A DNA stretch of 64,000 bases from Macrostomum lignano (GCA_002269645.1 NIVC01000023.1:1364001-1428000), one strand, 5' to 3'; numbered from the stretch's first letter, positions 17,172-45,165 are shown. Notes: generated by a model from the sequence alone, not told the origin. A program made the numbers and translations.

Positions 17172-17258
17172 ATGATGACAAAATAGATGACGAGTATGAT
17201 TGGCATAGCAAATAAATCTATGCTTTTTAATGTGAATTTTTATAAGGCATTTGTCTGA
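17172..17258 (+). ncRNA. SNORD15: Box C/D snoRNA, U15/SNORD15 family (LEM intron copy 1)
   Basis: Box C ATGATGA, D' guide TAGATGACGAG, internal stem GCATAG/CTATGC, D guide AGGCATTTG plus CTGA, terminal AAAA/TTTT. Confidence 0.85.
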
Positions 17259-17379
17259 TTTTGAGACAGAATTTAAACTAGTAATTATAGTAAGGTTGTC
17301 TTTATCCCATGAATTAAGTCTTAGTCCTAGTCTTAGTCCGCTTAGTTGCCATGCAGCTTAATATGCTGGATAATCACTC

Positions 17380-17540
17380 AGATTTGATCCCTTGACCAAT
17401 GGGTGCTAGTTGCCATGCAATCAGATAAACACGGCACCAGATTTGATCCCTTGACCAATGGGTGCTAGTTGCCATGCAATCAGATAAGCACACGGCACCA
17501 GATTTGATCCCTTGACCAATGGGTGCTAGTTGCCATGCAG
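17380..17540 (+). repeat. Short run of the 61-bp repeat upstream of the snoRNA module
   Basis: Three CAGATTTGATCCCTTGACCAATGGGTGCTAGTTGCCATGCA cores, the same family as 22297-23605. Confidence 0.9.
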
Positions 17541-17543
17541 TTA

Positions 17544-17670
17544 GTTGTCAATCCCGGTCAAGTTTAATACTGGTGCCAGAGCAACCCAGCTGGCAACAGC
17601 ACACCGCTGCAGCTGTCGCTGACTTCAGAGCGTCCTGGCTGCTGGTGGATGTTAATTCCGGCTTACAGAT
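17544..17670 (+). other. Conserved 127-nt GC-richer structured leader preceding snoRNA subtype a (candidate ncRNA or processing element)
   Basis: Two hairpins (GTTGTCA/TGGCAAC; CACC..GCAGC/GCTGC.GGTG), ending ACAGAT. 10 copies in the window, always at the module head. Function unknown. Confidence 0.4.
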
Positions 17671-17716
17671 AGCTTTATTGCTCAATGCACATTGTTAGTG
17701 ACTGTGCGGACTCGCT

Positions 17717-17801
17717 GTGATGACAATAGATGACGAGATTGACAGGTGCAAACTCGAGTAGTTTGTGCCAATTAGTGAAATTTAATGAGGCATTTGTCTG
17801 A
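17717..17801 (+). ncRNA. SNORD15: U15-family C/D snoRNA, subtype a (LEM intron copy 2)
   Basis: GTGATGA...TAGATGACGAG-A-TTGA...GGTGCAAACT/AGTTTGTGCC stem...GAGGCATTTGTCTGA. Confidence 0.9.
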
Positions 17802-17887
17802 GCCCTGAGTCCTGAGTATATATCTTAGATTTATATGATTTATGAGCTTATCAAGTACATAGAGTACTTTGGGTCATTGTGTTAGCA

Positions 17888-17967
17888 GTGATGACAATTT
17901 AGATGACGAACTGACAGACATAAATAATCAGTGTCTGCTCTGTGATCTTAATGAGGCATTTGTCTGA
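17888..17967 (+). ncRNA. SNORD15: U15-family C/D snoRNA, subtype b (LEM intron copy 3)
   Basis: GTGATGA...TTAGATGACGAA-CTGA...CAGACA/TGTCTG stem...GAGGCATTTGTCTGA. Confidence 0.9.
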
Positions 17968-18024
17968 GAACAAGACCCTATTGCATAGTGTTTATGAGTT
18001 TAGTCAGTTTTTATCAACTCGCTA

Positions 18025-18108
18025 ATGATGACAGAATAGATGACGAGATTGACAGGTGCAAATGATCAGTTTGTGCCAGTTATGAAATTCAAAGAGGCAT
18101 TTGTCTGA
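18025..18108 (+). ncRNA. SNORD15: U15-family C/D snoRNA, subtype c (LEM intron copy 4)
   Basis: ATGATGA...TAGATGACGAG-A-TTGA...GAGGCATTTGTCTGA with a perfect 8-bp terminal stem ACTCGCTA/TAGCGAGT. Confidence 0.92.
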
Positions 18109-18158
18109 TAGCGAGTGTCGCGATTTTTTTATGTTTGATAATAATAGCCTAAACTACA

Positions 18159-18238
18159 ATGATGACAATTTAGATGACGAGCTGATACAGGCATAACTTG
18201 TGCCTTTATAAAGTGATCTTAATGAGGCATTTGTCTGA
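18159..18238 (+). ncRNA. SNORD15: U15-family C/D snoRNA, b-like (LEM intron copy 5)
   Basis: ATGATGA...TTAGATGACGAG-CTGA...AGGCA/TGCCT stem...GAGGCATTTGTCTGA. Confidence 0.9.
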
Positions 18239-18338
18239 GTCCAAAAGCTTAATTTATTGTATATCCTATGGATTTTAATTCCATTATTGATCTATTATGG
18301 AGAGTTGTAAATATAAATAATACTTATTGTATTTTTAG

Positions 18339-18386
18339 CGAAAGCGATGTCAGTGACGGAGACGGCGCCAGAAGACAGCCAGTAAG
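18339..18386 (+). CDS. LEM-domain protein, exon 2 (48-nt symmetric phase 2-2 exon)
   Basis: Acceptor TTGTATTTTTAG, donor AG|GTAATA. Encodes (S)ESDVSDGDGARRQPV, an acidic Ser-rich linker in frame with exons 1 and 3. Confidence 0.65.
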
Positions 18387-19300: not shown

Positions 19301-19335
19301 TCGCCCAACAAGTCTTTCCCATTGTTTATTCGCAG

Positions 19336-19729: not shown

Positions 19730-19849
19730 ATGCGGAGATTGCATCGCAGTCTATCTGATCATGTTCGTTGTGTCCGTTTTTTATTGACCTGACTTAACTG
19801 CGCGAACTTTAAATTCCCCTGGTTCCCGGTGCACTTCTTTGAATATAAC

Positions 19850-21492: not shown

Positions 21493-22187
21493 ATGCTGCC
21501 AAATTCAAATGCCAATCGTCTTTCCCGTTTCCATGGCAACCGATGGCTTATAATGCTGACAATTATGTTGTTGCGGCTATCCCAGCTGGCGTTATTATTA
21601 GCTGAAAATGTTACAACTCAGCCAAGATTCGCAATCAGTAACCTTGAAGGTGTTAATGTTTATCGGTTATCAAGCAGCGATGATAGCGCTGATCAGGTGT
21701 CAGTCAAACCAATGCTGATATTAACCTACGCAGCGACTAGTCAAGCTGCTGCTAGTTCAGTTGCTAAGCAACTGATGCTACTAAAAGACTTTGTTAATTT
21801 GCCATCTTCAACCTCGACAAGGAGTAAAATTGTTGCAGAATTTCTACTACCAACTAGGAGCAACAATACAAACGTTTTAAAAGCATTGCGTCAATTAGAC
21901 TTGGTCGGTTATGAATCCATAACTAAGAAGCGAATATGTCAAATTCTTGCCTGCGAAAAAGATTTAAGCGGACAGCCTGAGTTAGTTGAACAGTTGGTTA
22001 ACAATCTGGCTGACAATGGCTGCAAGGTTAAATCCATTATTACCATAGACAATTGCTATCGAAGCGGCGCGTTGAAAGCGAGGCATCGGGCGTTTAATTT
22101 GACTAATCACTTGCAATGGCAGTTTATCAACTCGGGAGGCCTGGCTGATGACCATGAATACAGACTCAGATTGCGTCGAGACGTCAG
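21493..22187 (+). CDS. CPD: Carboxypeptidase D, coding exon 1 (signal peptide plus degenerate CP-like segment)
   Basis: Hydrophobic N-terminus (RWLIMLTIMLLRLSQLALLLA). Donor AG|GTGAG at 22188 is phase 2 and joins exon 2 as DVR-HHNY. Upstream acceptor TTTCAG at 21425. Confidence 0.75.
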
Positions 22188-22296
22188 GTGAGCGAAGCTG
22201 CACAACTGAAGTTGTTTTTGTTCCCCCATTGGAAATAAAGTTTGTCTTTTCTTAATATAATGTCAAATGTCAAAGATAAGCTGGACTGATGGACTA

Positions 22297-23605
22297 TTGA
22301 CCAATAGGTGCTAGTTGCCATGCAATCAGATAAGCACACGGCACCAGATTTGATCCCTTGACCAATGGGTGCTAGTTGCCATGCAATCAGATAAGCACAC
22401 GGCACCAGATTTGATCCCTTGACCAATGGGTGCTAGTTGCCATGCAATCAGATAAGCACACGGCACCAGATTTGATCCCTTGACCAATGGGTGCTAGTTG
22501 CCATGCAATCAGATAAGCACACGGCACCAGATTTGATCCCTTGACCAATGGGTGCTAGTTGCCATGCAATCAGATAAGCACACGGCACCAGATTTGATCC
22601 CTTGACCAATGGGTGCTAGTTGCCATGCAATCAGATAAGCACACGGCACCAGATTTGATCCCTTGACCAATGGGTGCTAGTTGCCATGCAATCAGATAAG
22701 CACACGGCACCAGATTTGATCCCTTGACCAATGGGTGCTAGTTGCCATGCAATTAAATGAGCACACGGCACCAGATTTGATCCCTTGACCAATGGGTGCT
22801 AGTTGCCATGCAATTAAATGAGCACACGGCACCAGATTTGATCCCTTGATCAATGGGTGCTAGTTGCCATGCAATTAAATGAGCACACGGCACCAGATTT
22901 GATCCCTTGATCAATGGGTGCTAGTTGCCATGCAATTAAATGAGCACACGGCACCAGATTTGATCCCTTGACCAATGGGTGCTAGTTGCCATGCAATTAA
23001 ATGAGCACACGGCACCAGATTTGATCCCTTGACCAATGGGTGCTAGTTGCCATGCAATTAAATGAGCACACGGCACCAGATTTGATCCCTTGACCAATGG
23101 GTGCTAGTTGCCATGCAATTAAATGAGCACACGGCACCAGATTTGATCCCTTGACCAATGGGTGCTAGTTGCCATGCAATTAAATGAGCACACGGCACCA
23201 GATTTGATCCCTTGACCAATGGGTGCTAGTTGCCATGCAATTAAATGAGCACACGGCATCAGATTTGATCCCTTGACCAATGGGTGCTAGTTGCCATGCA
23301 ATCAGATAAGCACACGGCACCAGATTTGATCCCTTGACCAATGGGTGCTAGTTGCCATGCAATTAAATGAGCACACGGCACCAGATTTGATCCCTTGATC
23401 AATGGGTGCTAGTTGCCATGCAATCAGATAAGCACACGGCACCAGATTTGATCCCTTGACCAATGGGTGCTAGTTGCCATGCAATTAAATGAGCACACGG
23501 CACCAGATTTGATCCCTTGACCAATGGGTGCTAGTTGCCATGCAATTAAATGAGCACACGGCACCAGATTTGATCCCTTGACCAATGGGTGCTAGTTGCC
23601 ATGCA
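22297..23605 (+). repeat. 61-bp tandem array, 21 full units, two interspersed variants
   Basis: GCACACGGCA recurs every 61 bp from 22334 to 23554. Variants CAATCAGATAA (A) and CAATTAAATGA (B). No spacers. Confidence 0.97.
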
Positions 23606-23782
23606 GTTAGTTGTCAAGCCCGGTCAAGTTTAATACTGGTGCCAGAGCAACCCAGCTGGCAACAGCACACCGCTGCAGCTGTCGCTGACTTCAGAGCTGC
23701 CTGGCTGCTGGTGGATGTTAATTCCGGCTTACAGATAGCTTTATTGCTCAATACACATTGTTAGTGACTGTGCGGATTCGCT

Positions 23783-23867
23783 GTGATGACAATAGATGAT
23801 GAGATTGACAGGTGCAAACTCGAGTAGTTTGTGCCAATTAGTGAAATTTAATGAGGCATTTGTCTGA
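23783..23867 (+). ncRNA. SNORD15: U15-family C/D snoRNA, subtype a (first CPD-intron copy; D' guide variant GATGATGAG)
   Basis: GTGATGA...GAGGCATTTGTCTGA with the same stems as 17717. Confidence 0.88.
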
Positions 23868-23941
23868 GCCCTGACTCCTGAGTATATAGATTTATATTAT
23901 TTATGAGCTTATCAGGTACATAGAGTGCTTTGGGTCATTGT

Positions 23942-24292
23942 CCAGAAGACACAGCCTGGCGTAATGACAAACTTAACTGGCCATTATTTCAGCTGCATCT
24001 CGTCAGCTCAAGCCTATCATCAGCTTATTCATTTATAGTCTATGGCCCAACAGCTTTTTTACTTATAGTCTATGGCCCAACCACCGCCCTCTTTACGCAG
24101 TCGCACGCACGCAGACTCTTACCCTGAAATAATGACCGCTTCCGGCACGCTGAAATAATGGCCAGGCTGTGTCTTATAGACAATGACGTTGCGTAGTAGG
24201 TAAGGGGCTGAAATAATGGCCATAGAAACTCGTGCGCTACGCGCACTCGTGTTTGGCCATTATTTCAGCCCCTTACTTACTACGCAATCTAC
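23942..24292. mobile_element. 351-bp non-autonomous palindromic insertion with 6-bp direct repeat CATTGT (Crypton-like or MITE); copies at 29063, 34184, 39304, 44425
   Basis: The empty site GGGTCATTGTG is visible at ~27085 and ~28755. CATTGT at 23936-23941 and 24293-24298. Two long internal hairpins (23934-24187; 24188-24289). Confidence 0.7.
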
Positions 24293-24305
24293 CATTGTGT
24301 GAGCA

Positions 24306-24688
24306 GTGATGACAATTTAGATGACGAACTGACAGGCATAATCAGTGTCTGCTCTGTGATCTTAATGAGGCATTTGTCTGAGAACAAGACCCTATTGCAT
24401 AGTGTTTATGAGTTTAGTCAGTTTTTATCAACTCGCTAATGATGACAGAATAGATGACGAGATTGACAGGTGCAAATAATCAGTTTGTGCCAGTTATGAA
24501 ATTCAATGAGGCATTTGTCTGATAGCGAGTGTCACGGTTATATGTTTCACAATATGTGATTGTTACACTAAAGTTTGTCGTGTGTAAATTCTTCCTCTAT
24601 AAAAATGATGACAAAAAAGATGACGAGAATGACTGGCATAGCGACTGTCTTTCCTTCAGTATGAATTATTAATGAGGCATTTGTCTGA
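24306..24688 (+). ncRNA. SNORD15: Cluster of 3 U15-family snoRNAs (b 24306-24381, c 24439-24522, d 24605-24688)
   Basis: Each has RTGATGA, an AGATGACGA guide and GAGGCATTTGTCTGA. Confidence 0.9.
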
Positions 24689-24797
24689 TTTTCAATTTAG
24701 AACTAAGTCAGGCAGCTGTTAGTCAAATAAGTCTTATTACTTGTCCTGAAAATGGAGTATCGGTATATTAAAGCAGGATTTTACTGCCTAATAATAC

Positions 24798-25632
24798 GGG
24801 GCTATAAAATTTGCTTGCGGAAATTTGCTTGCTGAAGTCTGCTTGTCGAATTTTGCTTGCCGAAGTTTGCTTGCAGAAATTTTGCTTGCCGAGGTTTGCC
24901 AGCCACAGTTTTCTTGCGGAACCTTAAAGAACCTATTATTACGCTCTTGTATTTCTAATTTTTATTTTCTATGATTCGTGGAAGTCGCCTATAGTGTTAT
25001 GATTTTGTATGAGGTTTTGGCGGATTTGAAAAGCCGTAATGCATAAATGTAATAATTTAGTTTTTTACTGGGAATACATTTTCAACAAAAATTAGACACA
25101 ATTTCGAACAATGCACATATCGAATGATTTAGGCACCGAAATGTACAGAATAGATTTTTTTAGAAATGAACGTACATTGTACACCAATGAACATCATTTC
25201 TATATACTAAATTCTTAGAATGAAACTCTATAAGCCTAGTTTGAAAGCTTAGTGTCAAGTCAGTTGACGTCGATGCTGATAAGAATCCACTTGCAAAACA
25301 TCTGTAGTAAGTAATAATTGACTGACCAACTTCACAAGCAATCAAAACAAGCAAGCAGACAAGAAAAGAATTCGGCAAGTTTAAACCTTGCAATTATGAT
25401 TGCGAATTTCTAGGAAGCAGACATCAAAATTCCGCAAGCAAAGTTCGGCAAGCAAAGTTCCTGCAAGCAAATTTCCTGCAACTGCAAGCAAAGTTCGGGA
25501 TGCGAAGTTCGGCATACAAAGTTCGGCATGCAAAATTCGGCAAGAAAAATTCGGCCAGCAAAGTTCGGCAGGCAAAATTCCGGCAAGCAAAGTTCGGCAA
25601 GCAAACTTCCCGCAAGCAAACGTCGTACTCCC
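24798..25632. mobile_element. ~835-bp non-autonomous TIR element with inverted arrays of ~13-bp subterminal repeats (GCAAGCAAAGTTCG); copies at ~29919, 35040, 40160
   Basis: Left end GGGGCTATAAAATTTGCTTGCGGAAATTTGCTTGC is mirrored by right end GCAAGCAAACTTCCCGCAAGCAAACGTCGTACTCCC. Absent from the homologous module tail at ~27595. Confidence 0.65.
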
Positions 25633-25834
25633 ATTCCAACCATCGACCATAGTGTTCAATTTCACCAGTCTTATTCCCTTACTTTGCACTCCAGCAGTCC
25701 ATTTTCCACTGCCTCCTCTGGGGAGTTCAAAAGACAGTGCAACCGTTGTTGACCCAGGCCTCAACCCACCCGGTACATGGTTGGCTTGTCGTTCTCATTT
25801 CATGGGTGTTTCAATAAAGTAAAGATCACAATCG

Positions 25835-26244
25835 GTGAAGCCTATCTCCTCTCTGATAGGTGTGAAGGCTGTTGGCTCCAAGGTGATGTGCCTTTGTTAA
25901 GGTCTTGCTTTTGGTCCTGCTAGGTGCCCACGCACCCTACTCAATAATTTGATTACACCTACCCTAATGGACAGATGTGCAACCGACAGCTCAGCGGCAG
26001 CCATTGCGCGGCGCATCTGAAGGCTGCGTACGGCTGTTCAGTCCAAGGACTGGGGGGGGGGGTCGCCACACACACCCTCAATTACCCCAGCTAATGCTGG
26101 CACCCATTTTACAGCTGGGTGAACTGAAGCAATGCAGAGTTAAGTGTCTTGCTCAAGGACACAAATTGTTCCAGTGGGATTTGGGAATCGAACCCCCGAC
26201 CTTCAAGTCGTGAGTCCGACGCTCTGACCACTAGGCTACAACCC
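25835..26244 (-). mobile_element. tRNA-derived CORE-type SINE; copies at ~30956-31365, 36077-36485, 41197-41606
   Basis: Minus strand has A box TAGCCTAGTGG, B box GGTTCGATTCC, then GTGTCCTTGAGCAAGACACTTAAC...CTGTAAAATGGG resembling the MIR/CORE domain. The 3' boundary is uncertain. Confidence 0.85.
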
Positions 26245-26361
26245 TAGCCTAGTGATACTCACTAGGACTCACCAGGATCCTCACTAGGATCCTTAACACC
26301 AGCTGATCCTCAAAAACTGTTAAAGCAGCTAAGTTGGTGTTTCATGTAACTCTTTTGTAAC

Positions 26362-26441
26362 TTGTACAAATAGACGACGAGAATGACTGCATTAACACTT
26401 TCTATGATTCGCTAGGAATTACTATTGAGGCATTTGTCTGA
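26362..26441 (+). pseudogene. SNORD15: Degenerate U15 copy lacking box C; copies at ~31483, 36603, 41724
   Basis: TAGACGACGAG (mutated D' guide) ... GAGGCATTTGTCTGA, with no RTGATGA upstream. Confidence 0.75.
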
Positions 26442-34930: not shown

Positions 34931-37171
34931 TTTTCAATTTAGAACTAAGTCAGGCAGCTGTTAGTCAAATAAGTCTTATTACTTGTCCTGAAAATGGAGT
35001 ATCGGTATATTAAAGCAGGATTTTACTGCCTAATAATACGGGGCTATAAAATTTGCTTGCGGAAATTTGCTTGCTGAAGTCTGCTTGTCGAATTTTGCTT
35101 GCCGAAGTTTGCTTGCAGAAATTTTGCTTGCCGAGGTTTGCCAGCCACAGTTTTCTTGCGGAACCTTAAAGAACCTATTATTACGCTCTTGTATTTCTAA
35201 TTTTTATTTTCTATGATTCGTGGAAGTCGCCTATAGTGTTATGATTTTGTATGAGGTTTTGGCGGATTTGAAAAGCCGTAATGCATAAATGTAATAATTT
35301 AGTTTTTTACTGGGAATACATTTTCAACAAAAATTAGACACAATTTCGAACAATGCACATATCGAATGATTTAGGCACCGAAATGTACAGAATAGATTTT
35401 TTTAGAAATGAACGTACATTGTACACCAATGAACATCATTTCTATATACTAAATTCTTAGAATGAAACTCTATAAGCCTAGTTTGAAAGCTTAGTGTCAA
35501 GTCAGTTGACGTCGATGCTGATAAGAATCCACTTGCAAAACATCTGTAGTAAGTAATAATTGACTGACCAACTTCACAAGCAATCAAAACAAGCAAGCAG
35601 ACAAGAAAAGAATTCGGCAAGTTTAAACCTTGCAATTATGATTGCGAATTTCTAGGAAGCAGACATCAAAATTCCGCAAGCAAAGTTCGGCAAGCAAAGT
35701 TCCTGCAAGCAAATTTCCTGCAACTGCAAGCAAAGTTCGGGATGCGAAGTTCGGCATACAAAGTTCGGCATGCAAAATTCGGCAAGAAAAATTCGGCCAG
35801 CAAAGTTCGGCAGGCAAAATTCCGGCAAGCAAAGTTCGGCAAGCAAACTTCCCGCAAGCAAACGTCGTACTCCCATTCCAACCATCGACCATAGTGTTCA
35901 ATTTCACCAGTCTTATTCCCTTACTTTGCACTCCAGCAGTCCATTTTCCACTGCCTCCTCTGGGGAGTTCAAAAGACAGTGCAACCGTTGTTGACCCAGG
36001 CCTCAACCCACCCGGTACATGGTTGGCTTGTCGTTCTCATTTCATGGGTGTTTCAATAAAGTAAAGATCACAATCGGTGAAGCCTATCTCCTCTCTGATA
36101 GGTGTGAAGGCTGTTGGCTCCAAGGTGATGTGCCTTTGTTAAGGTCTTGCTTTTGGTCCTGCTAGGTGCCCACGCACCCTACTCAATAATTTGATTACAC
36201 CTACCCTAATGGACAGATGTGCAACCGACAGCTCAGCGGCAGCCATTGCGCGGCGCATCTGAAGGCTGCGTACGGCTGTTCAGTCCAAGGACTGGGGGGG
36301 GGGTCGCCACACACACCCTCAATTACCCCAGCTAATGCTGGCACCCATTTTACAGCTGGGTGAACTGAAGCAATGCAGAGTTAAGTGTCTTGCTCAAGGA
36401 CACAAATTGTTCCAGTGGGATTTGGGAATCGAACCCCCGACCTTCAAGTCGTGAGTCCGACGCTCTGACCACTAGGCTACAACCCTAGCCTAGTGATACT
36501 CACTAGGACTCACCAGGATCCTCACTAGGATCCTTAACACCAGCTGATCCTCAAAAACTGTTAAAGCAGCTAAGTTGGTGTTTCATGTAACTCTTTTGTA
36601 ACTTGTACAAATAGACGACGAGAATGACTGCATTAACACTTTCTATGATTCGCTAGGAATTACTATTGAGGCATTTGTCTGATTTTCAATTTGAAATCGA
36701 GTTAGACTCTGGTGAGACAAATAAGCTTTAATTATATAGGTTTTAAGATTATTGGATTTCCTGTATAAATTAGTCAATCCAATGCTATGTTTTCCTTTAT
36801 TACCGTCCTGAAAGTAGAGCATTAGTATCTAGTGTAAAATAGGGTATTAGTAGTGTAGCAGATTTACTGCCTAATAAATCAAGTTATCTTCTATTTTATT
36901 TAAGACGCTATTTAAAATTCTAGTTGCCATGCAATCAGATAAGCACACGGCACCAGATTTGATCCCTTGACCAATGGGTGCTAGTTGCCATGCAGTTAGT
37001 TGTCAAGCCCGGTCAAGTTTAATACTGGTGCCAGAGCAACCCAGCTGGCAACAGCACACCGCTGCAGCTGTCGCTGACTTCAGAGCTGCCTGGCTGCTGG
37101 TGGATGTTAATTCCGGCTTACAGATAGCTTTATTGCTCAATGCACATTGTTAGTGACTGTGCGGATTCGCT

Positions 37172-37726
37172 GTGATGACAATAGATGACGAGATTGACAG
37201 GTGCAAACTCGAGTAGTTTGTGCCAATTAGTGAAATTTAATGAGGCATTTGTCTGAGCCCTGAGTCCTGAGTATATATCTTAGATTTATATTATTTATGA
37301 GCTTATCAAGTACATAGAGTACTTTGGGTCATTGTGTTAGCAGTGATGACAATTTAGATGACGAACTGACAGACATAATCAGTGTCTGCTCTGTGATCTT
37401 AATGAGGCATTTGTCTGAGCACAAGACCCTATTGCATAGTGTTTATGAGTTTAGTCAGTTTTTATCAACTCGCTAATGATGACAGAATAGATGACGAGAT
37501 TGACAGGTGCAAATGATCAGTTTGTGCCAGTTATGAAATTTCAATGAGGCATTTGTCTGATAGCGAGTGTCACGGTTATATGTTTCACAATATGTGATTG
37601 TTACACTAAAGTTTGTAGTTTGTAAATTCTTCCTCTATAAAAATGATGACAAAAAAGATGACGAGAATGACTGGCATAGCGACTGTCTTTCCTTCAGTAT
37701 GAATTATTAATGAGGCATTTGTCTGA
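37172..37726 (+). ncRNA. SNORD15: Cluster of 4 U15-family snoRNAs (a,b,c,d), unit 3
   Basis: Copy of 26931-27485. Confidence 0.9.
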
Positions 37727-38843
37727 TTTTCAATTTAGAACTAAGTCAGGCAGCTGTTAACTTGTTAAGACAAATAAGCCTTATTACTTTTCCTGAAAGT
37801 GGAGTATCGGTGTATTAAAGCAGGATTTTACTGCCTAATTAATACATCATAGCATCAAGCTGTCTAGATTTTGTTTAAAAAGCGTATGACTAATTTTGTA
37901 CCTCAAATGTTAAATAATTTCAGGTCTTAGTTAGACACCGGCCTCATTGTCTCTGTATTAATAATGCACCAAATTTCAGGGCCTTCGGCCTTCATGGATT
38001 TCGATGCAATATTTTTTATGGGTAGTGCCTTGAATGTCTCACTGACTTGAAGATTTAAATACCTTTTGACCAATGGGTGTTATTCAATTACATAAGCACA
38101 TGGCACCGATGAGTGCTAGTTGCCACGCAATTAGACAAGTAAATAAACACGCGGCAACTAATTAGTGCGTGGGGGCGTAGCCTAGCAGGCGCTCTGATGT
38201 ACCAGAGGCCCAGGCTCGATTCCAAGTGCAGTCACATTAATTTGGGGCTGAATTGGAATCTCGGCTTGGCTCTACTCGTGCAATTAACGCCTGCGTTGAG
38301 GGCCACCCCAAGGCACAGTGAAGTGTACATGCCTAACGATAAATAAAGTTAGGGTCGCTGTACACTCCTGTGTGACTGAGTGAGTGCCTGTGCGTGTGAC
38401 TGCGTACGTATCCGCGCGCTTGTGTGCCTGCTCAGGGGGGTCAGCGGAACAGACATAATGCTTCTTGCCGGTTGTGTAACAGTGTCGCTTAAAGTGCGCC
38501 ATGATGCACACAGCCCTTGTCTCTAATAAAAAACCAACGGGTGCCAGTGTAAATGCGATACGGCACCAGATTTGATCCCTTGACCAATGGGTGCTAGTTG
38601 CCATGCAATCAGATAAACACGGCACCAGATTTGATCTCTTGACCAATGGGTGCTAGTTGCCATGCAGTTAGTTGTCAAGCCCGGTCAAGTTTAATACTGG
38701 TGCCAGAGCAACCCAGCTGGCAACAGCACACCGCTGCAGCTGTCGCTGACTTCAGAGCTGCCTGGCTGCTGGTGGATGTTAATTCCGGCTTACAGATAGC
38801 TTTATTGCTCAATGCACATTGTTAGTGACTGTGCGGACTCGCT

Positions 38844-39229
38844 GTGATGACAATAGATGACGAGATTGACAGGTGCAAACTCGAGTAGTTTGTGCCAATT
38901 AGTGAAATTTAATGAGGCATTTGTCTGAGCCCTGAGTCCTGAGTATATAGATTTATATTATTTATGAGCTTATCAAGTACATAGAGTACTTTGGGTCATT
39001 GTGTCAGCAGTGATGACAATTTAGATGACGAACTGACAGGCATAATCAGTGTCTGCTCTGTGATCTTAATGAGGCATTTGTCTGAGAACAAGACCCTATT
39101 GCATAGTGTTTATGAGTTTAGTCAGTTTTTATCAACTCGCTAATGATGACAGAATAGATGACGAGATTGACAGGTGCAAACTCGAGTAGTTTGTGCCAAT
39201 TAGTGAAATTTAATGAGGCATTTGTCTGA
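38844..39229 (+). ncRNA. SNORD15: Cluster of 3 U15-family snoRNAs (a,b,c/a), unit 3
   Basis: Copy of 28603-28988. Confidence 0.9.
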
Positions 39230-39667
39230 GCCCTGAGTCCTGAGTATATAGATTTATATTATTTATGAGCTTATCAGGTACATAGAGTGCTTTGGGTCAT
39301 TGTCCAGAAGACACAGCCTGGCGTAATGACAAACTTAACTGGCCATTATTTCAGCTGCATCTCGTCAGCTCAAGCCTATCATCAGCTTATTCATTTATAG
39401 TCTATGGCCCAACAGCTTTTTTACTTATAGTCTATGGCCCAACCACCGCCCTCTTTACGCAGTCGCACGCACGCAGACTCTTACCCTGAAATAATGACCG
39501 CTTCCGGCACGCTGAAATAATGGCCAGGCTGTGTCTTATAGACAATGACGTTGCGTAGTAGGTAAGGGGCTGAAATAATGGCCATAGAAACTCGTGCGCT
39601 ACGCGCACTCGTGTTTGGCCATTATTTCAGCCCCTTACTTACTACGCAATCTACCATTGTGTGAGCA

Positions 39668-40050
39668 GTGATGACAATTTAGATGACGAACTGACAGGCA
39701 TAATCAGTGTCTGCTCTGTGATCTTAATGAGGCATTTGTCTGAGAACAAGACCCTATTGCATAGTGTTTATGAGTTTAGTCAGTTTTTATCAACTCGCTA
39801 ATGATGACAGAATAGATGACGAGATTGACAGGTGCAAATAATCAGTTTGTGCCAGTTATGAAATTCAATGAGGCATTTGTCTGATAGCGAGTGTCACGGT
39901 TATATGTTTCACAATATGTGATTGTTACACTAAAGTTTGTCGTGTGTAAATTCTTCCTCTATAAAAATGATGACAAAAAAGATGACGAGAATGACTGGCA
40001 TAGCGACTGTCTTTCCTTCAGTATGAATTATTAATGAGGCATTTGTCTGA
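39668..40050 (+). ncRNA. SNORD15: Cluster of 3 U15-family snoRNAs (b,c,d), unit 4
   Basis: Copy of 24306-24688. Confidence 0.9.
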
Positions 40051-42292
40051 TTTTCAATTTAGAACTAAGTCAGGCAGCTGTTAGTCAAATAAGTCTTATT
40101 ACTTGTCCTGAAAATGGAGTATCGGTATATTAAAGCAGGATTTTACTGCCTAATAATACGGGGCTATAAAATTTGCTTGCGGAAATTTGCTTGCTGAAGT
40201 CTGCTTGTCGAATTTTGCTTGCCGAAGTTTGCTTGCAGAAATTTTGCTTGCCGAGGTTTGCCAGCCACAGTTTTCTTGCGGAACCTTAAAGAACCTATTA
40301 TTACGCTCTTGTATTTCTAATTTTTATTTTCTATGATTCGTGGAAGTCGCCTATAGTGTTATGATTTTGTATGAGGTTTTGGCGGATTTGAAAAGCCGTA
40401 ATGCATAAATGTAATAATTTAGTTTTTTACTGGGAATACATTTTCAACAAAAATTAGACACAATTTCGAACAATGCACATATCGAATGATTTAGGCACCG
40501 AAATGTACAGAATAGATTTTTTTAGAAATGAACGTACATTGTACACCAATGAACATCATTTCTATATACTAAATTCTTAGAATGAAACTCTATAAGCCTA
40601 GTTTGAAAGCTTAGTGTCAAGTCAGTTGACGTCGATGCTGATAAGAATCCACTTGCAAAACATCTGTAGTAAGTAATAATTGACTGACCAACTTCACAAG
40701 CAATCAAAACAAGCAAGCAGACAAGAAAAGAATTCGGCAAGTTTAAACCTTGCAATTATGATTGCGAATTTCTAGGAAGCAGACATCAAAATTCCGCAAG
40801 CAAAGTTCGGCAAGCAAAGTTCCTGCAAGCAAATTTCCTGCAACTGCAAGCAAAGTTCGGGATGCGAAGTTCGGCATACAAAGTTCGGCATGCAAAATTC
40901 GGCAAGAAAAATTCGGCCAGCAAAGTTCGGCAGGCAAAATTCCGGCAAGCAAAGTTCGGCAAGCAAACTTCCCGCAAGCAAACGTCGTACTCCCATTCCA
41001 ACCATCGACCATAGTGTTCAATTTCACCAGTCTTATTCCCTTACTTTGCACTCCAGCAGTCCATTTTCCACTGCCTCCTCTGGGGAGTTCAAAAGACAGT
41101 GCAACCGTTGTTGACCCAGGCCTCAACCCACCCGGTACATGGTTGGCTTGTCGTTCTCATTTCATGGGTGTTTCAATAAAGTAAAGATCACAATCGGTGA
41201 AGCCTATCTCCTCTCTGATAGGTGTGAAGGCTGTTGGCTCCAAGGTGATGTGCCTTTGTTAAGGTCTTGCTTTTGGTCCTGCTAGGTGCCCACGCACCCT
41301 ACTCAATAATTTGATTACACCTACCCTAATGGACAGATGTGCAACCGACAGCTCAGCGGCAGCCATTGCGCGGCGCATCTGAAGGCTGCGTACGGCTGTT
41401 CAGTCCAAGGACTGGGGGGGGGGGTCGCCACACACACCCTCAATTACCCCAGCTAATGCTGGCACCCATTTTACAGCTGGGTGAACTGAAGCAATGCAGA
41501 GTTAAGTGTCTTGCTCAAGGACACAAATTGTTCCAGTGGGATTTGGGAATCGAACCCCCGACCTTCAAGTCGTGAGTCCGACGCTCTGACCACTAGGCTA
41601 CAACCCTAGCCTAGTGATACTCACTAGGACTCACCAGGATCCTCACTAGGATCCTTAACACCAGCTGATCCTCAAAAACTGTTAAAGCAGCTAAGTTGGT
41701 GTTTCATGTAACTCTTTTGTAACTTGTACAAATAGACGACGAGAATGACTGCATTAACACTTTCTATGATTCGCTAGGAATTACTATTGAGGCATTTGTC
41801 TGATTTTCAATTTGAAATCGAGTTAGACTCTGGTGAGACAAATAAGCTTTAATTATATAGGTTTTAAGATTATTGGATTTCCTGTATAAATTAGTCAATC
41901 CAATGCTATGTTTTCCTTTATTACCGTCCTGAAAGTAGAGCATTAGTATCTAGTGTAAAATAGGGTATTAGTAGTGTAGCAGATTTACTGCCTAATAAAT
42001 CAAGTTATCTTCTATTTTATTTAAGACGCTATTTAAAATTCTAGTTGCCATGCAATCAGATAAGCACACGGCACCAGATTTGATCCCTTGACCAATGGGT
42101 GCTAGTTGCCATGCAGTTAGTTGTCAAGCCCGGTCAAGTTTAATACTGGTGCCAGAGCAACCCAGCTGGCAACAGCACACCGCTGCAGCTGTCGCTGACT
42201 TCAGAGCTGCCTGGCTGCTGGTGGATGTTAATTCCGGCTTACAGATAGCTTTATTGCTCAATGCACATTGTTAGTGACTGTGCGGATTCGCT

Positions 42293-42847
42293 GTGATGAC
42301 AATAGATGACGAGATTGACAGGTGCAAACTCGAGTAGTTTGTGCCAATTAGTGAAATTTAATGAGGCATTTGTCTGAGCCCTGAGTCCTGAGTATATATC
42401 TTAGATTTATATTATTTATGAGCTTATCAAGTACATAGAGTACTTTGGGTCATTGTGTTAGCAGTGATGACAATTTAGATGACGAACTGACAGACATAAT
42501 CAGTGTCTGCTCTGTGATCTTAATGAGGCATTTGTCTGAGCACAAGACCCTATTGCATAGTGTTTATGAGTTTAGTCAGTTTTTATCAACTCGCTAATGA
42601 TGACAGAATAGATGACGAGATTGACAGGTGCAAATGATCAGTTTGTGCCAGTTATGAAATTTCAATGAGGCATTTGTCTGATAGAGAGTGTCACGGTTAT
42701 ATGTTTCACAATATGTGATTGTTACACTAAAGTTTGTAGTTTGTAAATTCTTCCTCTATAAAAATGATGACAAAAAAGATGACGAGAATGACTGGCATAG
42801 CGACTGTCTTTCCTTCAGTATGAATTATTAATGAGGCATTTGTCTGA
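42293..42847 (+). ncRNA. SNORD15: Cluster of 4 U15-family snoRNAs (a,b,c,d), unit 4
   Basis: Copy of 26931-27485. Confidence 0.9.
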
Positions 42848-43964
42848 TTTTCAATTTAGAACTAAGTCAGGCAGCTGTTAACTTGTTAAGACAAATAAGC
42901 CTTATTACTTTTCCTGAAAGTGGAGTATCGGTGTATTAAAGCAGGATTTTACTGCCTAATTAATACATCATAGCATCAAGCTGTCTAGATTTTGTTTAAA
43001 AAGCGTATGACTAATTTTGTACCTCAAATGTTAAATAATTTCAGGTCTTAGTTAGACACCGGCCTCATTGTCTCTGTATTAATAATGCACCAAATTTCAG
43101 GGCCTTCGGCCTTCATGGATTTCGATGCAATATTTTTTATGGGTAGTGCCTTGAATGTCTCACTGACTTGAAGATTTAAATACCTTTTGACCAATGGGTG
43201 TTATTCAATTACATAAGCACATGGCACCGATGAGTGCTAGTTGCCACGCAATTAGACAAGTAAATAAACACGCGGCATCTAATTAGTGCGTGGGGGCGTA
43301 GCCTAGCAGGCGCTCTGATGTACCAGAGGCCCAGGCTCGATTCCAAGTGCAGTCACATTAATTTGGGGCTGAATTGGAATCTCGGCTTGGCTCTACTCGT
43401 GCAATTAACGCCTGCGTTGAGGGCCACCCCAAGGCACAGTGAAGTGTACATGCCTAACGATAAATAAAGTTAGGGTCGCTGTACACTCCTGTGTGACTGA
43501 GTGAGTGCCTGTGCGTGTGACTGCGTACGTATCCGCGCGCTTGTGTGCCTGCTCAGGGGGGTCAGCGGAACAGACATAATGCTTCTTGCCGGTTGTGTAA
43601 CAGTGTCGCTTAAAGTGCGCCATGATGCACACAGCCCTTGTCTCTAATAAAAAACCAACGGGTGCCAGTGTAAATGCGATACGGCACCAGATTTGATCCC
43701 TTGACCAATGGGTGCTAGTTGCCATGCAATCAGATAAACACGGCACCAGATTTGATCTCTTGACCAATGGGTGCTAGTTGCCATGCAGTTAGTTGTCAAG
43801 CCCGGTCAAGTTTAATACTGGTGCCAGAGCAACCCAGCTGGCAACAGCACACCGCTGCAGCTGTCGCTGACTTCAGAGCTGCCTGGCTGCTGGTGGATGT
43901 TAATTCCGGCTTACAGATAGCTTTATTGCTCAATGCACATTGTTAGTGACTGTGCGGACTCGCT

Positions 43965-44350
43965 GTGATGACAATAGATGACGAGATTGACAGGTGCAAA
44001 CTCGAGTAGTTTGTGCCAATTAGTGAAATTTAATGAGGCATTTGTCTGAGCCCTGAGTCCTGAGTATATAGATTTATATTATTTATGAGCTTATCAAGTA
44101 CATAGAGTACTTTGGGTCATTGTGTCAGCAGTGATGACAATTTAGATGACGAACTGACAGGCATAATCAGTGTCTGCTCTGTGATCTTAATGAGGCATTT
44201 GTCTGAGAACAAGACCCTATTGCATAGTGTTTATGAGTTTAGTCAGTTTTTATCAACTCGCTAATGATGACAGAATAGATGACGAGATTGACAGGTGCAA
44301 ACTCGAGTAGTTTGTGCCAATTAGTGAAATTTAATGAGGCATTTGTCTGA
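43965..44350 (+). ncRNA. SNORD15: Cluster of 3 U15-family snoRNAs (a,b,c/a), unit 4
   Basis: Copy of 28603-28988. Confidence 0.9.
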
Positions 44351-44788
44351 GCCCTGAGTCCTGAGTATATAGATTTATATTATTTATGAGCTTATCAGGT
44401 ACATAGAGTGCTTTGGGTCATTGTCCAGAAGACACAGCCTGGCGTAATGACAAACTTAACTGGCCATTATTTCAGCTGCATCTCGTCAGCTCAAGCCTAT
44501 CATCAGCTTATTCATTTATAGTCTATGGCCCAACAGCTTTTTTACTTATAGTCTATGGCCCAACCACCGCCCTCTTTACGCAGTCGCACGCACGCAGACT
44601 CTTACCCTGAAATAATGACCGCTTCCGGCACGCTGAAATAATGGCCAGGCTGTGTCTTATAGACAATGACGTTGCGTAGTAGGTAAGGGGCTGAAATAAT
44701 GGCCATAGAAACTCGTGCGCTACGCGCACTCGTGTTTGGCCATTATTTCAGCCCCTTACTTACTACGCAATCTACCATTGTGTGAGCA

Positions 44789-45165
44789 GTGATGACAATT
44801 TAGATGACGAACTGACAGGCATAATCAGTGTCTGCTCTGTGATCTTAATGAGGCATTTGTCTGAGAACAAGACCCTATTGCATAGTGTTTATGAGTTTAG
44901 TCAGTTTTTATCAACTCGCTAATGATGACAGAATAGATGACGAGATTGACAGGTGCAAATGATCAGTTTGTGCCAGTTATGACATTTCAATGAGGCATTT
45001 GTCTGATATCGAGTTTCGCTTATATGTTGTTTTCCATAATTTTACTACTATACCAGTCTGTAAGTCCTTCGCTTTTTAAATATGATGACAAATTAGATGA
45101 CGAGAATGACTGGTATAGCGACTATCTGTGCTTCAGTATGAATTATTAATGAGGCATTTGTTTGA
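44789..45165 (+). ncRNA. SNORD15: Terminal cluster of 3 U15-family snoRNAs (b 44789, c 44922-45006, divergent d-like 45082-45165 with box D variant TTGA)
   Basis: The last copy has a 14-nt D' guide AATTAGATGACGAG and ends GAGGCATTTGTTTGA. Confidence 0.85.

What the first reader, a model, noticed from the sequence alone, without database searches (positions are those of the whole stretch)
17172..45165. 53-copy expansion of a dual-guide U15/SNORD15 snoRNA hidden in two introns
Seen: 53 units of the form RTGATGA...AGATGACGA...AGGCATTTGT(C/T)TGA. 48 have canonical C and D boxes, 4 lack box C and 1 has TTGA. Established (rRNA sequence recalled): both guides are antisense to the conserved LSU rRNA segment GCCAAAUGCCUCGUCAUCUAAUUAG. 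By the +5 rule the D guide targets the third A of CCAAAUG (yeast Am2281, snR13; human U15 site) and the D' guide of a/c/d targets the G of CUCGUC (yeast Gm2288, snR75). Most animals carry one or a few U15 genes. Inference: a locally amplified snoRNA array with an order of magnitude more gene copies, possibly a mobile or amplifiable snoRNA cassette. No tool-based confirmation was possible.
Basis: partly seen in the sequence, partly recalled or inferred. Interest (0 to 1): 0.9.

Follow-up and report, generated by a model that had tools for sequence, protein, structure and literature searches.

The report
Tandemly amplified U15-type snoRNA genes
Two neighbouring genes of the flatworm Macrostomum lignano carry 53 copies, in two introns, of the small RNA that guides two conserved ribosomal RNA methylations; this is an unusually large but mechanistically ordinary tandem gene amplification, and its exact copy number still needs read-level confirmation.

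Summary
There are 53 units of 76-87 nt on the + strand between 17172 and 45165. The exact guide-plus-D-box 14-mer (52 units) occurs nowhere else in the 764-Mb assembly except at two syntenic loci.

The genome is Macrostomum lignano (Mlig_3_7). The units are box C/D snoRNAs built like human SNORD15A. The D guide pairs with the species' own 28S rRNA and places A2605 at the +5 position (yeast Am2281, human Am3764). The D' guide of types A, C and D places G2612 (yeast Gm2288, human Gm3771). Type B is shifted by one base, to U2613.

Five units lie in intron 1 of a LEM-domain gene. Forty-eight lie in intron 1 of a carboxypeptidase-D-like gene.

The large array is a 5.12-kb higher-order repeat of 11 units, present about 4.2 times. 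Its copies are nearly identical, so the count cannot be verified from sequence alone. The homeologous loci hold 20 and 8 units.

A chimeric C/A unit, nested duplications of different ages and a locus-specific 61-bp minisatellite all point to unequal crossing-over, not mobility. Several copies are defective.

No Rfam family reaches its gathering score. Expression and methylation are untested.

Verdict: a new, extreme member of a known kind, of moderate interest.

The parts
16925..17105 (+). Exon 1 of a LEM-domain, tail-anchored (emerin-like) protein gene. In the window the C-run at 17000-17003 is one C shorter than in both homeologs, which shifts the reading frame.
   Evidence: Pfam LEM E=9.8e-9. 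CCCC in the window against CCCCC in C73 and C2275. The public model P0121 on C73 matches the three-exon model exactly.
17106..18338 (+). LEM gene intron 1, which holds the first cluster of 5 snoRNA units.
   Evidence: Donor GATAG|gtaagt and acceptor ttttag|C. The exon 1-exon 2 junction is confirmed by P0121.
17172..17258 (+). Unit D0. It has a C box, the AGATGACGAG guide, an ATGA D' box, a shorter 9-bp D guide (AAGGCATTTG) and CTGA. It starts 66 nt after the 5' splice site.
   Evidence: Strong terminal stem of -12.5 kcal/mol. Identical in all three loci.
17330..17545 (+). About 3 copies of the locus-specific 59-61-bp minisatellite. Each copy contains GACCAATGGG (CCAAT-like) and GTTGCCATGCAA (X-box-like). 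It is followed by a GC-rich leader of about 170 nt (17546-17716).
   Evidence: TRF. The same block precedes every type A unit. It is locus-specific in the genome.
17717..18238 (+). Units A (17717-17801), B (17888-17967), C (18025-18108) and B' (18159-18238), separated by spacers of 50-86 nt. The last unit ends 100 nt before the 3' splice site.
18339..18386 (+). LEM gene exon 2 (48 nt). Exon 3 is 19336-19729.
21493..22187 (+). Coding exon 1 of the carboxypeptidase-D-like gene (M14 peptidase plus CarboxypepD_reg domains).
   Evidence: tblastn of P0001 residues 1-223. Donor GTCAG|gtgagc. Pfam hits on downstream exons.
22188..45280 (+). Carboxypeptidase-D-like gene intron 1, 23.1 kb, which holds 48 snoRNA units. 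The same intron is 7.9 kb with 15 units in C73 and 1.3 kb with 3 units in C2275.
22297..23609 (+). 61-bp minisatellite, 21.5 copies at 98% identity, directly upstream of the array.
   Evidence: TRF. Self-BLAST.
23778..45177 (+). Higher-order tandem repeat with a period of 5120-5121 bp, about 4.2 copies. The copies are h0 23778-26359 (partial), h1 26360-31480, h2 31481-36600, h3 36601-41721 and h4 41722-45177 (partial).
   Evidence: Self-BLAST. h1, h2 and h3 differ at 5 positions. h0 and h4 differ from the internal copies only at the array ends.
26360..31480 (+). One full repeat with 11 units: E 26360-26441 (no C box); A 26931-27015; B 27102-27177; C 27234-27318; D 27401-27485; A 28603-28687; B 28769-28844; C/A chimera 28902-28988; B 29427-29502; C 29560-29643; D 29726-29809.
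   Evidence: Internal sub-duplications are 95-97% identical, at offsets of 1674, 2325 and 2796 bp.
28902..28988 (+). Chimeric unit: the 5' half (flank, C box) is type C and the 3' half is type A. It appears 4 times, at 28902, 34023, 39143 and 44264. It is the footprint of an unequal crossover between a C unit and an A unit, and its terminal stem is mismatched.
   Evidence: Sequence comparison. Terminal duplex of only -4.7 kcal/mol, against -11 to -12 for the parental types.
23783..23867 (+). Type A unit with a C-to-T change in the D' guide (AGATGATGAG), at the base that pairs with the target G.
45082..45165 (+). Last unit, type D, with a TTGA D box. It ends 115 nt before the 3' splice site. 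A truncated relic follows at 45196-45235.
24807..25625 (.). Element inside the repeat spacer with inverted blocks of short tandem repeats, resembling a transposon. A tRNA-like (SINE-like) segment lies at 26175-26245, and a MITE-like insertion with terminal inverted repeats lies at 29055-29410.
   Evidence: Sub-threshold tRNA hit of 27.5 bits. ARAGORN finds no tRNA gene.
45281..45413 (+). Carboxypeptidase-D-like gene exon 2. The later exons are intact (46382-46540, 47793-48131 and onward to about 60162).

Best explanation
These are genes for the Macrostomum lignano counterpart of the dual-guide box C/D snoRNA U15 (human SNORD15A; yeast snR13 plus snR75; Drosophila Me28S-Am2589).

Function (inferred). 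Each unit would assemble with fibrillarin, Nop56, Nop58 and Snu13 and direct 2'-O-methylation of 28S rRNA. The D guide targets A2605. The D' guide targets G2612 in types A, C and D. Both sites lie in helices 70/71 of domain IV, at intersubunit bridge B3.

Expression (inferred). The genes are sense-oriented inside intron 1 of a LEM-domain gene (5 units) and intron 1 of the adjacent carboxypeptidase-D-like gene (48 units). They are most likely released from the excised or unspliced intron. Because there are many units per intron, release would need cuts between units followed by exonucleolytic trimming back to the snoRNP.

Amplification (shown from sequence). An old cassette grew by repeated unequal crossing-over between its own similar units. 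The cassette consists of the 61-bp minisatellite, a leader and four diverged isoforms A-B-C-D. Growth happened first as sub-duplications that are now 95-97% identical. It happened most recently as a 5.12-kb, 11-unit higher-order repeat present about 4.2 times. The process is locus-bound and ongoing, and it differs between the three subgenomes of this neopolyploid (53, 20 and 8 units). Redundancy lets some copies decay.

Whether the amplification is adaptive dosage or a neutral by-product of a genome very prone to tandem repeats is not known. I lean towards neutral.
For: Anatomy.
- C box, D' box, degenerate C' box and D box occur in canonical order and spacing in 48 of 53 units.
- Across 25 distinct variants from three loci, the invariant columns are the boxes and both guides. 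The internal region is only about 60-70% alike.
- Types A, B, C and D0 fold into a terminal stem plus an internal hairpin, with z-scores from -1.8 to -3.4. The hairpin is kept with different sequences in different types: GGUGCAAAC/GUUUGUGCC, CAGACA/UGUCUG, GCAUAG/CUAUGC.

Target.
- The own rDNA carries the exact complement.
- The D guide forms 12 bp with LSU 2602-2613. The D' guide forms 10-11 bp with LSU 2609-2619.
- The +5 positions are A2605 and G2612, 7 nt apart. This matches yeast A2281/G2288 (PMC4174444) and human A3764/G3771, both guided by SNORD15A (PMC5027482).

Rfam. All sub-threshold hits are to families that share both guide sequences: plasmodium_snoR21, TtnuCD10, snoMe28S-Am2589, SNOR75, snR75, SNORD15.

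Uniqueness. All 80 genome-wide occurrences of the 14-mer lie in the three syntenic loci. The reversed control pattern gives 7 hits.

Host introns. P0121 and P0001 gene models.

Constraint. Between the window and C73, snoRNA bodies in the orthologous intron carry 10 substitutions in 410 sites, against 45 in 802 for the rest of the intron (Fisher p=0.013).

Mechanism.
- The chimeric C/A unit.
- Duplications of several ages: 88-91% and 99.7% in C73; 95-97% and about 99.9% in the window.
- The minisatellite is locus-specific.

Three loci. They are expected, because 69.6% of Mlig_3_7 lies in 3-copy paralogous blocks (PMC10733133).
Against: - No expression, snoRNP-association or methylation data were available.
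- No Rfam model reaches its gathering score. The best are snoMe28S-Am2589 at 29.2 against 37, snR75 at 24.1 against 40, and SNORD15 at 18.2 against 75.
- Animal introns usually process one snoRNA each. Forty-eight in one 23-kb intron needs a processing route that has not been shown in flatworms.
- Type D units in the window fold poorly (z +0.87).
- Several copies are visibly defective: 4 lack a C box, 1 has a TTGA D box, 1 has a guide mutation, and 4 are chimeras with a poor terminal stem. In C73, 2 of 3 D units lack a C box. An unknown fraction may therefore be silent.
- The 5.12-kb copies are so alike that the assembly may misstate their number. Mlig_3_7 is a Canu/PacBio draft with only 64% error-free bases by REAPR and many chimeric scaffolds.
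- Type B would methylate U2613, a site not reported as methylated in the human map consulted.
Confidence: 0.8

Rival explanations
1. The copy number is inflated by the assembly. The real locus holds one or two 5.12-kb units, giving about 21-32 snoRNA units in the window. The extra near-identical copies are mis-joined reads from the other subgenomes or haplotypes.
For: Copies h1, h2 and h3 differ at 5 of 5121 positions, and 3 of the 5 are single-base indels, two of them in homopolymer runs. Copies h2 and h3 differ by one G-run indel. The window also carries a probable homopolymer error in LEM exon 1. The assembly paper reports 872 coverage errors, and the later paper reports 36% chimeric scaffolds and mis-represented copy numbers.
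Against: Assemblers usually collapse identical tandem repeats rather than expand them. The h0 and h4 ends carry private variants that anchor the array in unique flanks. The homeologs independently show multi-cassette arrays of 15 and 3 units in the same intron, with old and recent duplications. Even a full collapse leaves about 21 units here and about 49 in the assembly.
Confidence: 0.25
2. Most of the array is neutral, satellite-like DNA. Only a few units per locus are processed into working snoRNA, for example the unit nearest each 3' splice site or the five in the LEM intron. The rest are passengers of minisatellite-driven unequal crossing-over and add no dosage.
For: Tandem repeats make up 15% of this genome, and nearly every intron of the host gene holds a minisatellite. 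The youngest copies are too recent for selection to have acted. Defective units are tolerated. The homeologs manage with 8 and 20 units. Transposon-like insertions sit inside the repeat.
Against: Boxes and guides are invariant in nearly all copies, including those from older duplications that are 88-97% identical. Spacers between units diverge by up to 33%. Terminal stems are retained for types A, C and D0.
Confidence: 0.35
3. The cassettes are independent transcription units. The 61-bp minisatellite (CCAAT-like plus X-box-like motifs) and the GC-rich leader act as a promoter for a polycistronic A-B-C-D precursor, as in plant and yeast snoRNA clusters. The host introns merely house them.
For: Every type A unit, in both introns and in all three loci, is preceded by the same minisatellite-plus-leader block. 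The minisatellite is found nowhere else in the genome apart from two relics. Polycistronic processing would explain many units per intron.
Against: The block shares no motif with the U1 snRNA promoter of this genome. The leader is no better conserved between homeologs (3.0% substitutions) than the intron average. The association could simply reflect the unit of duplication. The D0 and E units lie outside such cassettes.
Confidence: 0.15
4. The units are mobile snoRNA-derived elements (retrogenes or snoRTs, or cargo of a transposon) that spread by transposition.
For: Fragments homologous to the start of the LEM intron (a D0-like unit plus minisatellite) exist on two other contigs, C256 and C4349.
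Against: All 80 exact 14-mers lie in three syntenic loci. Units have no poly(A) tails or target-site duplications and share conserved spacers. The C256 relic includes host exon and intron sequence at 82% identity, so it is a segmental-duplication fragment and not a retrocopy.
Confidence: 0.03

Closest known systems
Human SNORD15A/B (U15), Rfam RF00067
   Same: Dual-guide box C/D snoRNA. The D guide targets the third A of CCAAAUG (28S A3764). The D' guide targets the G of CUCGUC (G3771), 7 nt away. It is intron-encoded in a protein-coding gene, in sense orientation (PMC5027482).
   Different: Humans have two copies, one per intron of RPS3 (my own knowledge). Here there are 5 and 48 per intron, in a LEM-domain gene and a carboxypeptidase-D-like gene. 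The unit is 76-87 nt against a 146-position Rfam model. The Rfam score is 18 bits against a 75-bit threshold, and only the 3' guide region aligns.
Yeast snR75 (Gm2288) and snR13 (Am2280/Am2281)
   Same: Same rRNA sites in helices 70/71 of domain IV. Losing these methylations destabilises 60S subunits and lowers fidelity in yeast (PMC4174444).
   Different: In yeast the two sites are served by two separate, independently transcribed single-copy genes. Here one RNA carries both guides. snR75 scores 24.1 bits against a 40-bit threshold.
Drosophila snoMe28S-Am2589 (RF00529), Plasmodium snoR21, Tetrahymena TtnuCD10, plant SNOR75
   Same: These are the best, though sub-threshold, full-length Rfam alignments. 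They share both guide sequences (GAUGACGAG and GAGGCAUUUG) and, for snoR21, an internal hairpin.
   Different: All are below the gathering score. Those families have one to a few copies per genome (my own knowledge for Drosophila: isoforms a-c).
Mammalian SNORD115 and SNORD116 arrays at the Prader-Willi locus
   Same: Dozens of tandemly repeated, intron-encoded canonical box C/D snoRNA genes produced by local amplification (PMC3413130, listed).
   Different: Those arrays have one snoRNA per intron of a repeated non-coding host exon-intron unit. They are imprinted and brain-specific and have no rRNA target. Here the RNA is a housekeeping rRNA guide, many units share one intron of a protein-coding gene, and no repeated exons were identified.
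Intronic and polycistronic snoRNA gene clusters of plants and Drosophila, and tandem snoRNA arrays of trypanosomatids and Euglena (own knowledge)
   Same: Several snoRNAs lie 50-90 nt apart in one precursor, which requires cuts between units. Isoform families arise by tandem duplication.
   Different: Those clusters usually mix different snoRNA species. This one contains only isoforms of a single species, arranged in a higher-order repeat.

Membership tests
Box C/D (2'-O-methylation guide) snoRNA | C box RUGAUGA near the 5' end and D box CUGA near the 3' end | tested here: met
   48 of 53 units have both. Four lack the C box and one has UUGA as its D box.
Box C/D (2'-O-methylation guide) snoRNA | Terminal stem that brings the C and D boxes together | tested here: met
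   Types D0, A and C have flank duplexes of -11 to -12.5 kcal/mol. Type B has a more distal GGGUC/GACCC stem. Type D and the chimera are weak.
Box C/D (2'-O-methylation guide) snoRNA | An antisense element of 10 nt or more immediately upstream of D or D', placing a conserved rRNA methylation site opposite the 5th nucleotide | tested here: met
   The D guide forms 12 bp with LSU 2602-2613, with +5 at A2605. The D' guide forms 10-11 bp with LSU 2609-2619, with +5 at G2612 (U2613 for type B). The target is exact in the own rDNA. The sites equal yeast A2281/G2288 and human A3764/G3771.
Box C/D (2'-O-methylation guide) snoRNA | Internal D' and C' boxes | tested here: met
   The D' box is UUGA, AUGA or CUGA and its TGA is an invariant column. 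The C' box is degenerate (GUGAAA, GUGAUC, AUGAAA, AUGAAU).
Box C/D (2'-O-methylation guide) snoRNA | Accumulates as a stable RNA of about 70-100 nt bound by fibrillarin, Nop56, Nop58 and Snu13, and the target is methylated | not testable with these tools
   No RNA-seq, CLIP or RiboMeth-seq data could be reached. No paper on M. lignano snoRNAs was found.
Rfam SNORD15 (RF00067), snR75 (RF01185) and snoMe28S-Am2589 (RF00529); the first two share clan CL00045 | Covariance-model score at or above the curated gathering threshold | tested here: not met
   No hits at gathering thresholds. The best scores are 18.2 against 75, 24.1 against 40, and 29.2 against 37 bits. Membership therefore rests on the shared targets and architecture, not on the Rfam models.
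U15 orthology group, defined by target | One RNA guides both the A of CCAAAUG (D guide) and the G of CUCGUC (D' guide) in helices 70/71 | tested here: met
   Types A, C, D and D0. Type B keeps the D guide, but its D' register is shifted by 1 nt.
SNORD115/116-type tandem array | Each snoRNA lies in its own intron of a tandemly repeated host exon-intron unit | tested here: inconclusive
   The gene model of the homeolog splices straight across the whole array. Units lie 50-90 nt apart with no room for exons within cassettes. Cryptic exons between cassettes cannot be excluded without RNA-seq.
snoRNA retrogenes (snoRTs) or other mobile snoRNA copies | Dispersed copies with a poly(A) tail and target-site duplications | tested here: not met
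   All copies lie in three syntenic loci. The relics on C256 and C4349 carry host exon or intron sequence. No poly(A) tails or target-site duplications were seen.

The most novel reading that the evidence does not exclude
The cassette (a locus-specific CCAAT/X-box minisatellite, a leader and four U15 isoforms) is a self-contained, independently transcribed snoRNA operon. Its copy number changes quickly by unequal crossing-over and differs about 7-fold between the subgenomes of a neopolyploid. This would give heritable variation in U15 dosage, and so in methylation stoichiometry at bridge B3. The abundant type B isoform would add a lineage-specific Um2613 next to Gm2612. That would make it a natural system for studying snoRNA dosage and ribosome heterogeneity.
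Probability: 0.1. Interest if true: 0.7.

Novelty: new member of a known kind. Interest (0 to 1): 0.35.

Why it matters
rRNA-guiding snoRNAs in animals are normally single-copy or few-copy and sit one per intron. Here a housekeeping guide reaches 8, 20 and 53 copies at three homeologous loci, with many units sharing one intron of a protein-coding gene.

If the copies are expressed, three things follow:
- Flatworms can process long intronic snoRNA polycistrons.
- The locus becomes a datable example of snoRNA gene birth-and-death by unequal crossing-over, with chimeric units, isoform divergence and decay of redundant copies.
- It gives a natural dosage series for a methylation cluster (helices 70/71, bridge B3) that matters for 60S stability in yeast.

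It is also a practical warning for annotation. None of the 53 genes is found by Rfam at its default thresholds.

If the copies are mostly silent, or the count is an assembly effect, this is simply one more tandem repeat in a genome that is 15% tandem repeats.

Tried and rejected
- Rfam at gathering thresholds on the window gave nothing.
- Rfam families RF00016 and RF00529 searched over the whole genome gave nothing. The first-look filter is too coarse for short snoRNAs, so this says nothing about absence.
I used patterns instead.
- I wanted the copy number of another universal snoRNA (U14) as a control, to learn whether all snoRNAs are amplified here. Three patterns derived from the U14 guide, the last two adjusted to this species' 18S (ACATCTAAGG), found nothing. 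The control is therefore missing.
- An snRNA-type promoter was tested. No 8-mer or longer is shared between the U1 upstream region and the cassette leader.
- A simple snoscan-like scan of the window for other guides (11 nt or more, followed by CTGA) found only the type B D' guide and one chance match without a C box. No other snoRNA species was detected in these introns by this narrow scan.
- ARAGORN found no tRNA genes in the repeat. The tRNA-like hits are SINE-like remnants.
- The literature search found no paper describing M. lignano snoRNAs or this array.


Full report
**1.

The pattern AGGCATTTGTYTGA (up to 1 mismatch) occurs 53 times. All matches are on the + strand, between 17245 and 45165. 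Shuffles predict 0.09 matches.

Each match is the 3' end of a 76-87 nt unit. The unit reads, in order:
- C box RTGATGA
- 4-7 nt
- AGATGACGA(G/A)
- a D' box (TTGA, ATGA or CTGA)
- an internal hairpin
- a degenerate C' box
- (A)ATGAGGCATTTGT
- D box CTGA

Four units have no C box, one has a TTGA D box, and 48 are canonical. A covariance model built from 25 distinct variants recovers the same 53 at 71-100 bits. It also finds one truncated relic at 45196-45235.

Only 16 distinct core sequences exist. They fall into types A (10), B (14), B' (1), C (10), a C/A chimera (4), D (9), D0 (1) and E (4, degenerate).

**2. Organism and genomic setting.**

A concatenation of the downstream exons finds 'hypothetical protein BOX15_Mlig003337g1 [Macrostomum lignano]' (P0001). 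P0001 lies on a contig of 944,459 bp, which is contig C73 of this same assembly.

The assembly has 764.4 Mb in 5,269 contigs. That matches Mlig_3_7, a Canu assembly of PacBio data with 15% tandem repeats (PMC5730564).

The window holds two adjacent + strand genes.

The first encodes a 207-aa LEM-domain protein with a C-terminal membrane anchor:
- Pfam LEM, E=9.8e-9.
- Exons at 16925-17105, 18339-18386 and 19336-19729.
- My three-exon model of the C73 copy is letter-for-letter the public protein P0121.
- Its intron 1 (17106-18338) holds five units: D0, then the minisatellite and leader, then A, B, C and B'.

The second encodes a carboxypeptidase-D-like protein (M14 plus CarboxypepD_reg domains):
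- Exon 1 ends at 22187 (GTCAG|gtgagc).
- Exon 2 starts at 45281.
- The 23.1-kb intron between them holds the other 48 units.

So 'two introns' is correct. All units are in the sense orientation of their hosts.

**3. Architecture of the amplification.**

Self-comparison shows a tandem higher-order repeat from 23778 to 45177, with a period of 5120-5121 bp and about 4.2 copies. Each period carries 11 units in the order E | A B C D | A B C/A | B C D. It also contains older internal duplications that are 95-97% identical.

The three complete periods differ at only 5 positions. Periods h2 and h3 differ by a single G-run indel. The partial end copies differ from the inner ones only near the array boundaries.

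The spacers hold transposon-like insertions and SINE-like tRNA remnants that were amplified along with the snoRNAs.

Every type A unit is preceded by a piece of a 61-bp minisatellite and a GC-rich leader of about 170 nt. A 21.5-copy block of the minisatellite (22297-23609) lies just upstream of the array.

The C/A unit has the 5' flank and C-box side of type C and the 3' half and flank of type A. That is what an unequal crossover between a C unit and an A unit would leave.

**4. Genome-wide distribution.**

The exact 14-mer AGGCATTTGTCTGA occurs 80 times in the assembly: 52 on C23 (this window), 20 on C73 and 8 on C2275. It occurs nowhere else. The reversed control pattern occurs 7 times.

C73 and C2275 are collinear with the window across both host genes, at 85-99% identity. 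Both have the same five units in the LEM intron. Their carboxypeptidase introns hold A-B-C-D x3 plus A-B-C (C73, 7.9 kb) and A-B-C only (C2275, 1.3 kb).

Three collinear copies are what is expected for this neopolyploid. In Mlig_3_7, 69.6% of the assembly lies in 3-copy paralogous blocks that correspond to subgenomes S, L1 and L2. Some 36% of the assembly length lies in chimeric scaffolds (PMC10733133).

C2275 resembles the window on its 5' side and C73 on its 3' side. It is either chimeric or recombinant.

In C73 the cassettes are 99.7% identical for one pair and 88-91% for the others. Duplication has therefore occurred repeatedly over time, which argues that the process is biological.

Copies of one type resemble each other more within a locus than between loci. 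For example, the type C loop is AAATTTCAG in every C73 copy but AAATGATCAG or AAATAATCAG in the window. This indicates independent amplification or concerted evolution.

The 61-bp minisatellite is likewise confined to these three loci, plus short relics on C256 and C4349. The C256 relic is a 620-bp fragment, 82% identical to window 17076-17541. It includes host exon sequence and a D0-like unit with no C box. It is a duplication remnant, not a transposed copy.

The 'mobile cassette' idea is therefore not supported. 'Locally amplifiable' is supported.

**5. What the units are.**

The species' own rDNA (L015: LSU 2717-6474 by Rfam) contains GCCAAATGCCTCGTCATCTAATTAG exactly, starting at LSU position 2600.

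The D guide 5'-AUGAGGCAUUUG-3' pairs with LSU 2602-2613 (11 Watson-Crick pairs plus one G-U). The fifth nucleotide upstream of CUGA pairs with A2605.

The D' guide 5'-(U)AGAUGACGAG-3' pairs with LSU 2609-2619. In types A, C, D and D0, the fifth nucleotide upstream of the D' box pairs with G2612.

The two sites are 7 nt apart. This matches two known cases:
- Yeast A2281 (snR13) and G2288 (snR75), in helices 70/71 at bridge B3 (PMC4174444).
- Human A3764 and G3771, both assigned to SNORD15A through its D and D' guides (PMC5027482).

Type B and B' units have one nucleotide fewer before a canonical CUGA D' box. The rule therefore points to U2613. I found no report of methylation at the equivalent human position in the map I consulted.

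Across the 25 variants, the invariant columns are the boxes and both guides, while the interior varies freely. Even so, each type keeps a hairpin there with a different sequence.

In the orthologous LEM intron, snoRNA bodies differ between the window and C73 at 10 of 410 sites. The rest of the intron differs at 45 of 802 sites (p=0.013). Unit D0 is identical in all three loci.

All of this fits functional dual-guide C/D snoRNAs of the U15 target group.

**6. Membership caveat.**

No Rfam family reaches its gathering score. In E-value mode every snoRNA hit is to a family that shares the two guide sequences: plasmodium_snoR21, TtnuCD10, snoMe28S-Am2589, SNOR75, snR75 and SNORD15. The best scores are 31, 30, 29, 24.5, 24 and 18 bits, against thresholds of 90, 85, 37, 50, 40 and 75.

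I therefore file these as U15-type by target and architecture, not as members of RF00067.

**7. How it most likely works.**

Shown:
- gene anatomy
- complementarity to the species' own rRNA
- intron location
- mode and relative timing of duplication

Inferred:
- The units are transcribed as part of the two host pre-mRNAs.
- Units only 50-90 nt apart must be separated by endonucleolytic cuts and trimmed to the snoRNP, as in plant, yeast and Drosophila clusters.
- The last unit in each intron lies 100-115 nt upstream of the 3' splice site, which is compatible with splicing-coupled assembly.

An alternative is that the minisatellite and leader form a promoter for each A-B-C-D cassette. The strict association is suggestive. 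However, the block shares no motif with the U1 promoter, and the leader is not unusually conserved.

Whether amplification raises dosage is unknown. The following all fit neutral expansion at least as well:
- decaying copies (type E, the TTGA D box, a guide mutation, the chimera's poor stem, C-box loss in C73 type D units)
- the extreme youth of the 5.12-kb repeat
- the tandem-repeat richness of this genome

**8. Reliability of '53'.**

The near-identity of the 5.12-kb copies means the sequence cannot prove how many there are. The window also shows a probable homopolymer error (CCCC against CCCCC in LEM exon 1).

If the repeat were collapsed to one passage (h0 plus h4), the window would still hold about 21 units. 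The assembly would hold about 49. Read-level evidence is needed.

**9. Novelty and verdict.**

I found no description of this array or of M. lignano snoRNAs in the searchable literature.

Tandem snoRNA arrays (SNORD115/116) and multi-snoRNA introns (plants, Drosophila) are known. Local duplication is the standard way that snoRNA isoforms arise. What is unusual here is the scale for a housekeeping rRNA guide in an animal, the single-species composition of the cluster, and the roughly 7-fold difference between homeologs.

I rate it a new, extreme member of a known kind, with interest 0.35.

Noticed in passing
L015:8262-8424 (G000:C1213, rDNA unit): A full-length U1 snRNA gene (151.7 bits) sits in the rDNA intergenic spacer, about 1.8 kb downstream of the 28S gene. 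It would therefore be repeated with every rDNA unit.
   Followed up: no
L020:5310-5373 and 4422-4485 (G000:C23:1360310, just upstream of the window); over 300 places genome-wide: A dispersed repeat carries a 28S-derived segment of about 65 nt. The segment spans the R2-insertion-site region and the U15 target, with one change (GCTAAATGCCTCGTCATCTAATTAG). The 25-mer search (up to 1 mismatch) gave 152 + 158 matches in all, about 39 of them exact rDNA copies; most of the rest carry this variant and are spread over many contigs. Only this part of 28S was searched, so no link to the snoRNA array can be inferred.
   Followed up: partly
window 17000-17003: LEM-domain gene exon 1 has a run of 4 C where both homeologs have 5. 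This shifts the frame inside the LEM domain. It is either a PacBio homopolymer error or the start of pseudogenisation of this homeolog.
   Followed up: partly
window 17888-17967 and the 14 other type B and B' units: Type B and B' units have a canonical CUGA D' box one nucleotide closer to the guide. The +5 rule therefore selects U2613 instead of G2612. This could be a lineage-specific extra methylation or an inactive register.
   Followed up: partly
window 22297-23609, 17330-17545, and upstream of every type A unit: The 61-bp minisatellite contains GACCAATGGG (CCAAT-box-like) and GTTGCCATGCAA (RFX/X-box-like) in every repeat. In the whole genome it is found only at the three snoRNA loci and in two relics.
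   Followed up: partly
window 45455-63708: Most introns of the carboxypeptidase-D-like gene contain their own minisatellite, with periods of 18-36 bp and higher-order periods of 45-181 bp. One 28-bp family (CAGCCTCCCAGATCCTCAGTTGCTGGGC) recurs at 20532-20991, 50172-50724 and 55072-55429.
   Followed up: no
G000:C2275 (66 kb) compared with C23 and C73: Contig C2275 is 97-99% identical to the window upstream of and in the LEM gene. In the carboxypeptidase intron and later exons it resembles C73 instead. This is either a chimeric scaffold or a recombinant homeolog.
   Followed up: partly
G000:C256:23410-23690 and C4349:21605-21684: These are relic fragments of the start of the LEM intron: a D0-like unit with no C box and a TTGA D box, plus about 1.3 minisatellite repeats. 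They lie outside any carboxypeptidase or LEM gene context.
   Followed up: partly
window 12738-14330: A purine-rich (GA) low-complexity block of about 1.5 kb with strong strand skew (GC skew +0.53). It produces long spurious open reading frames on both strands.
   Followed up: no
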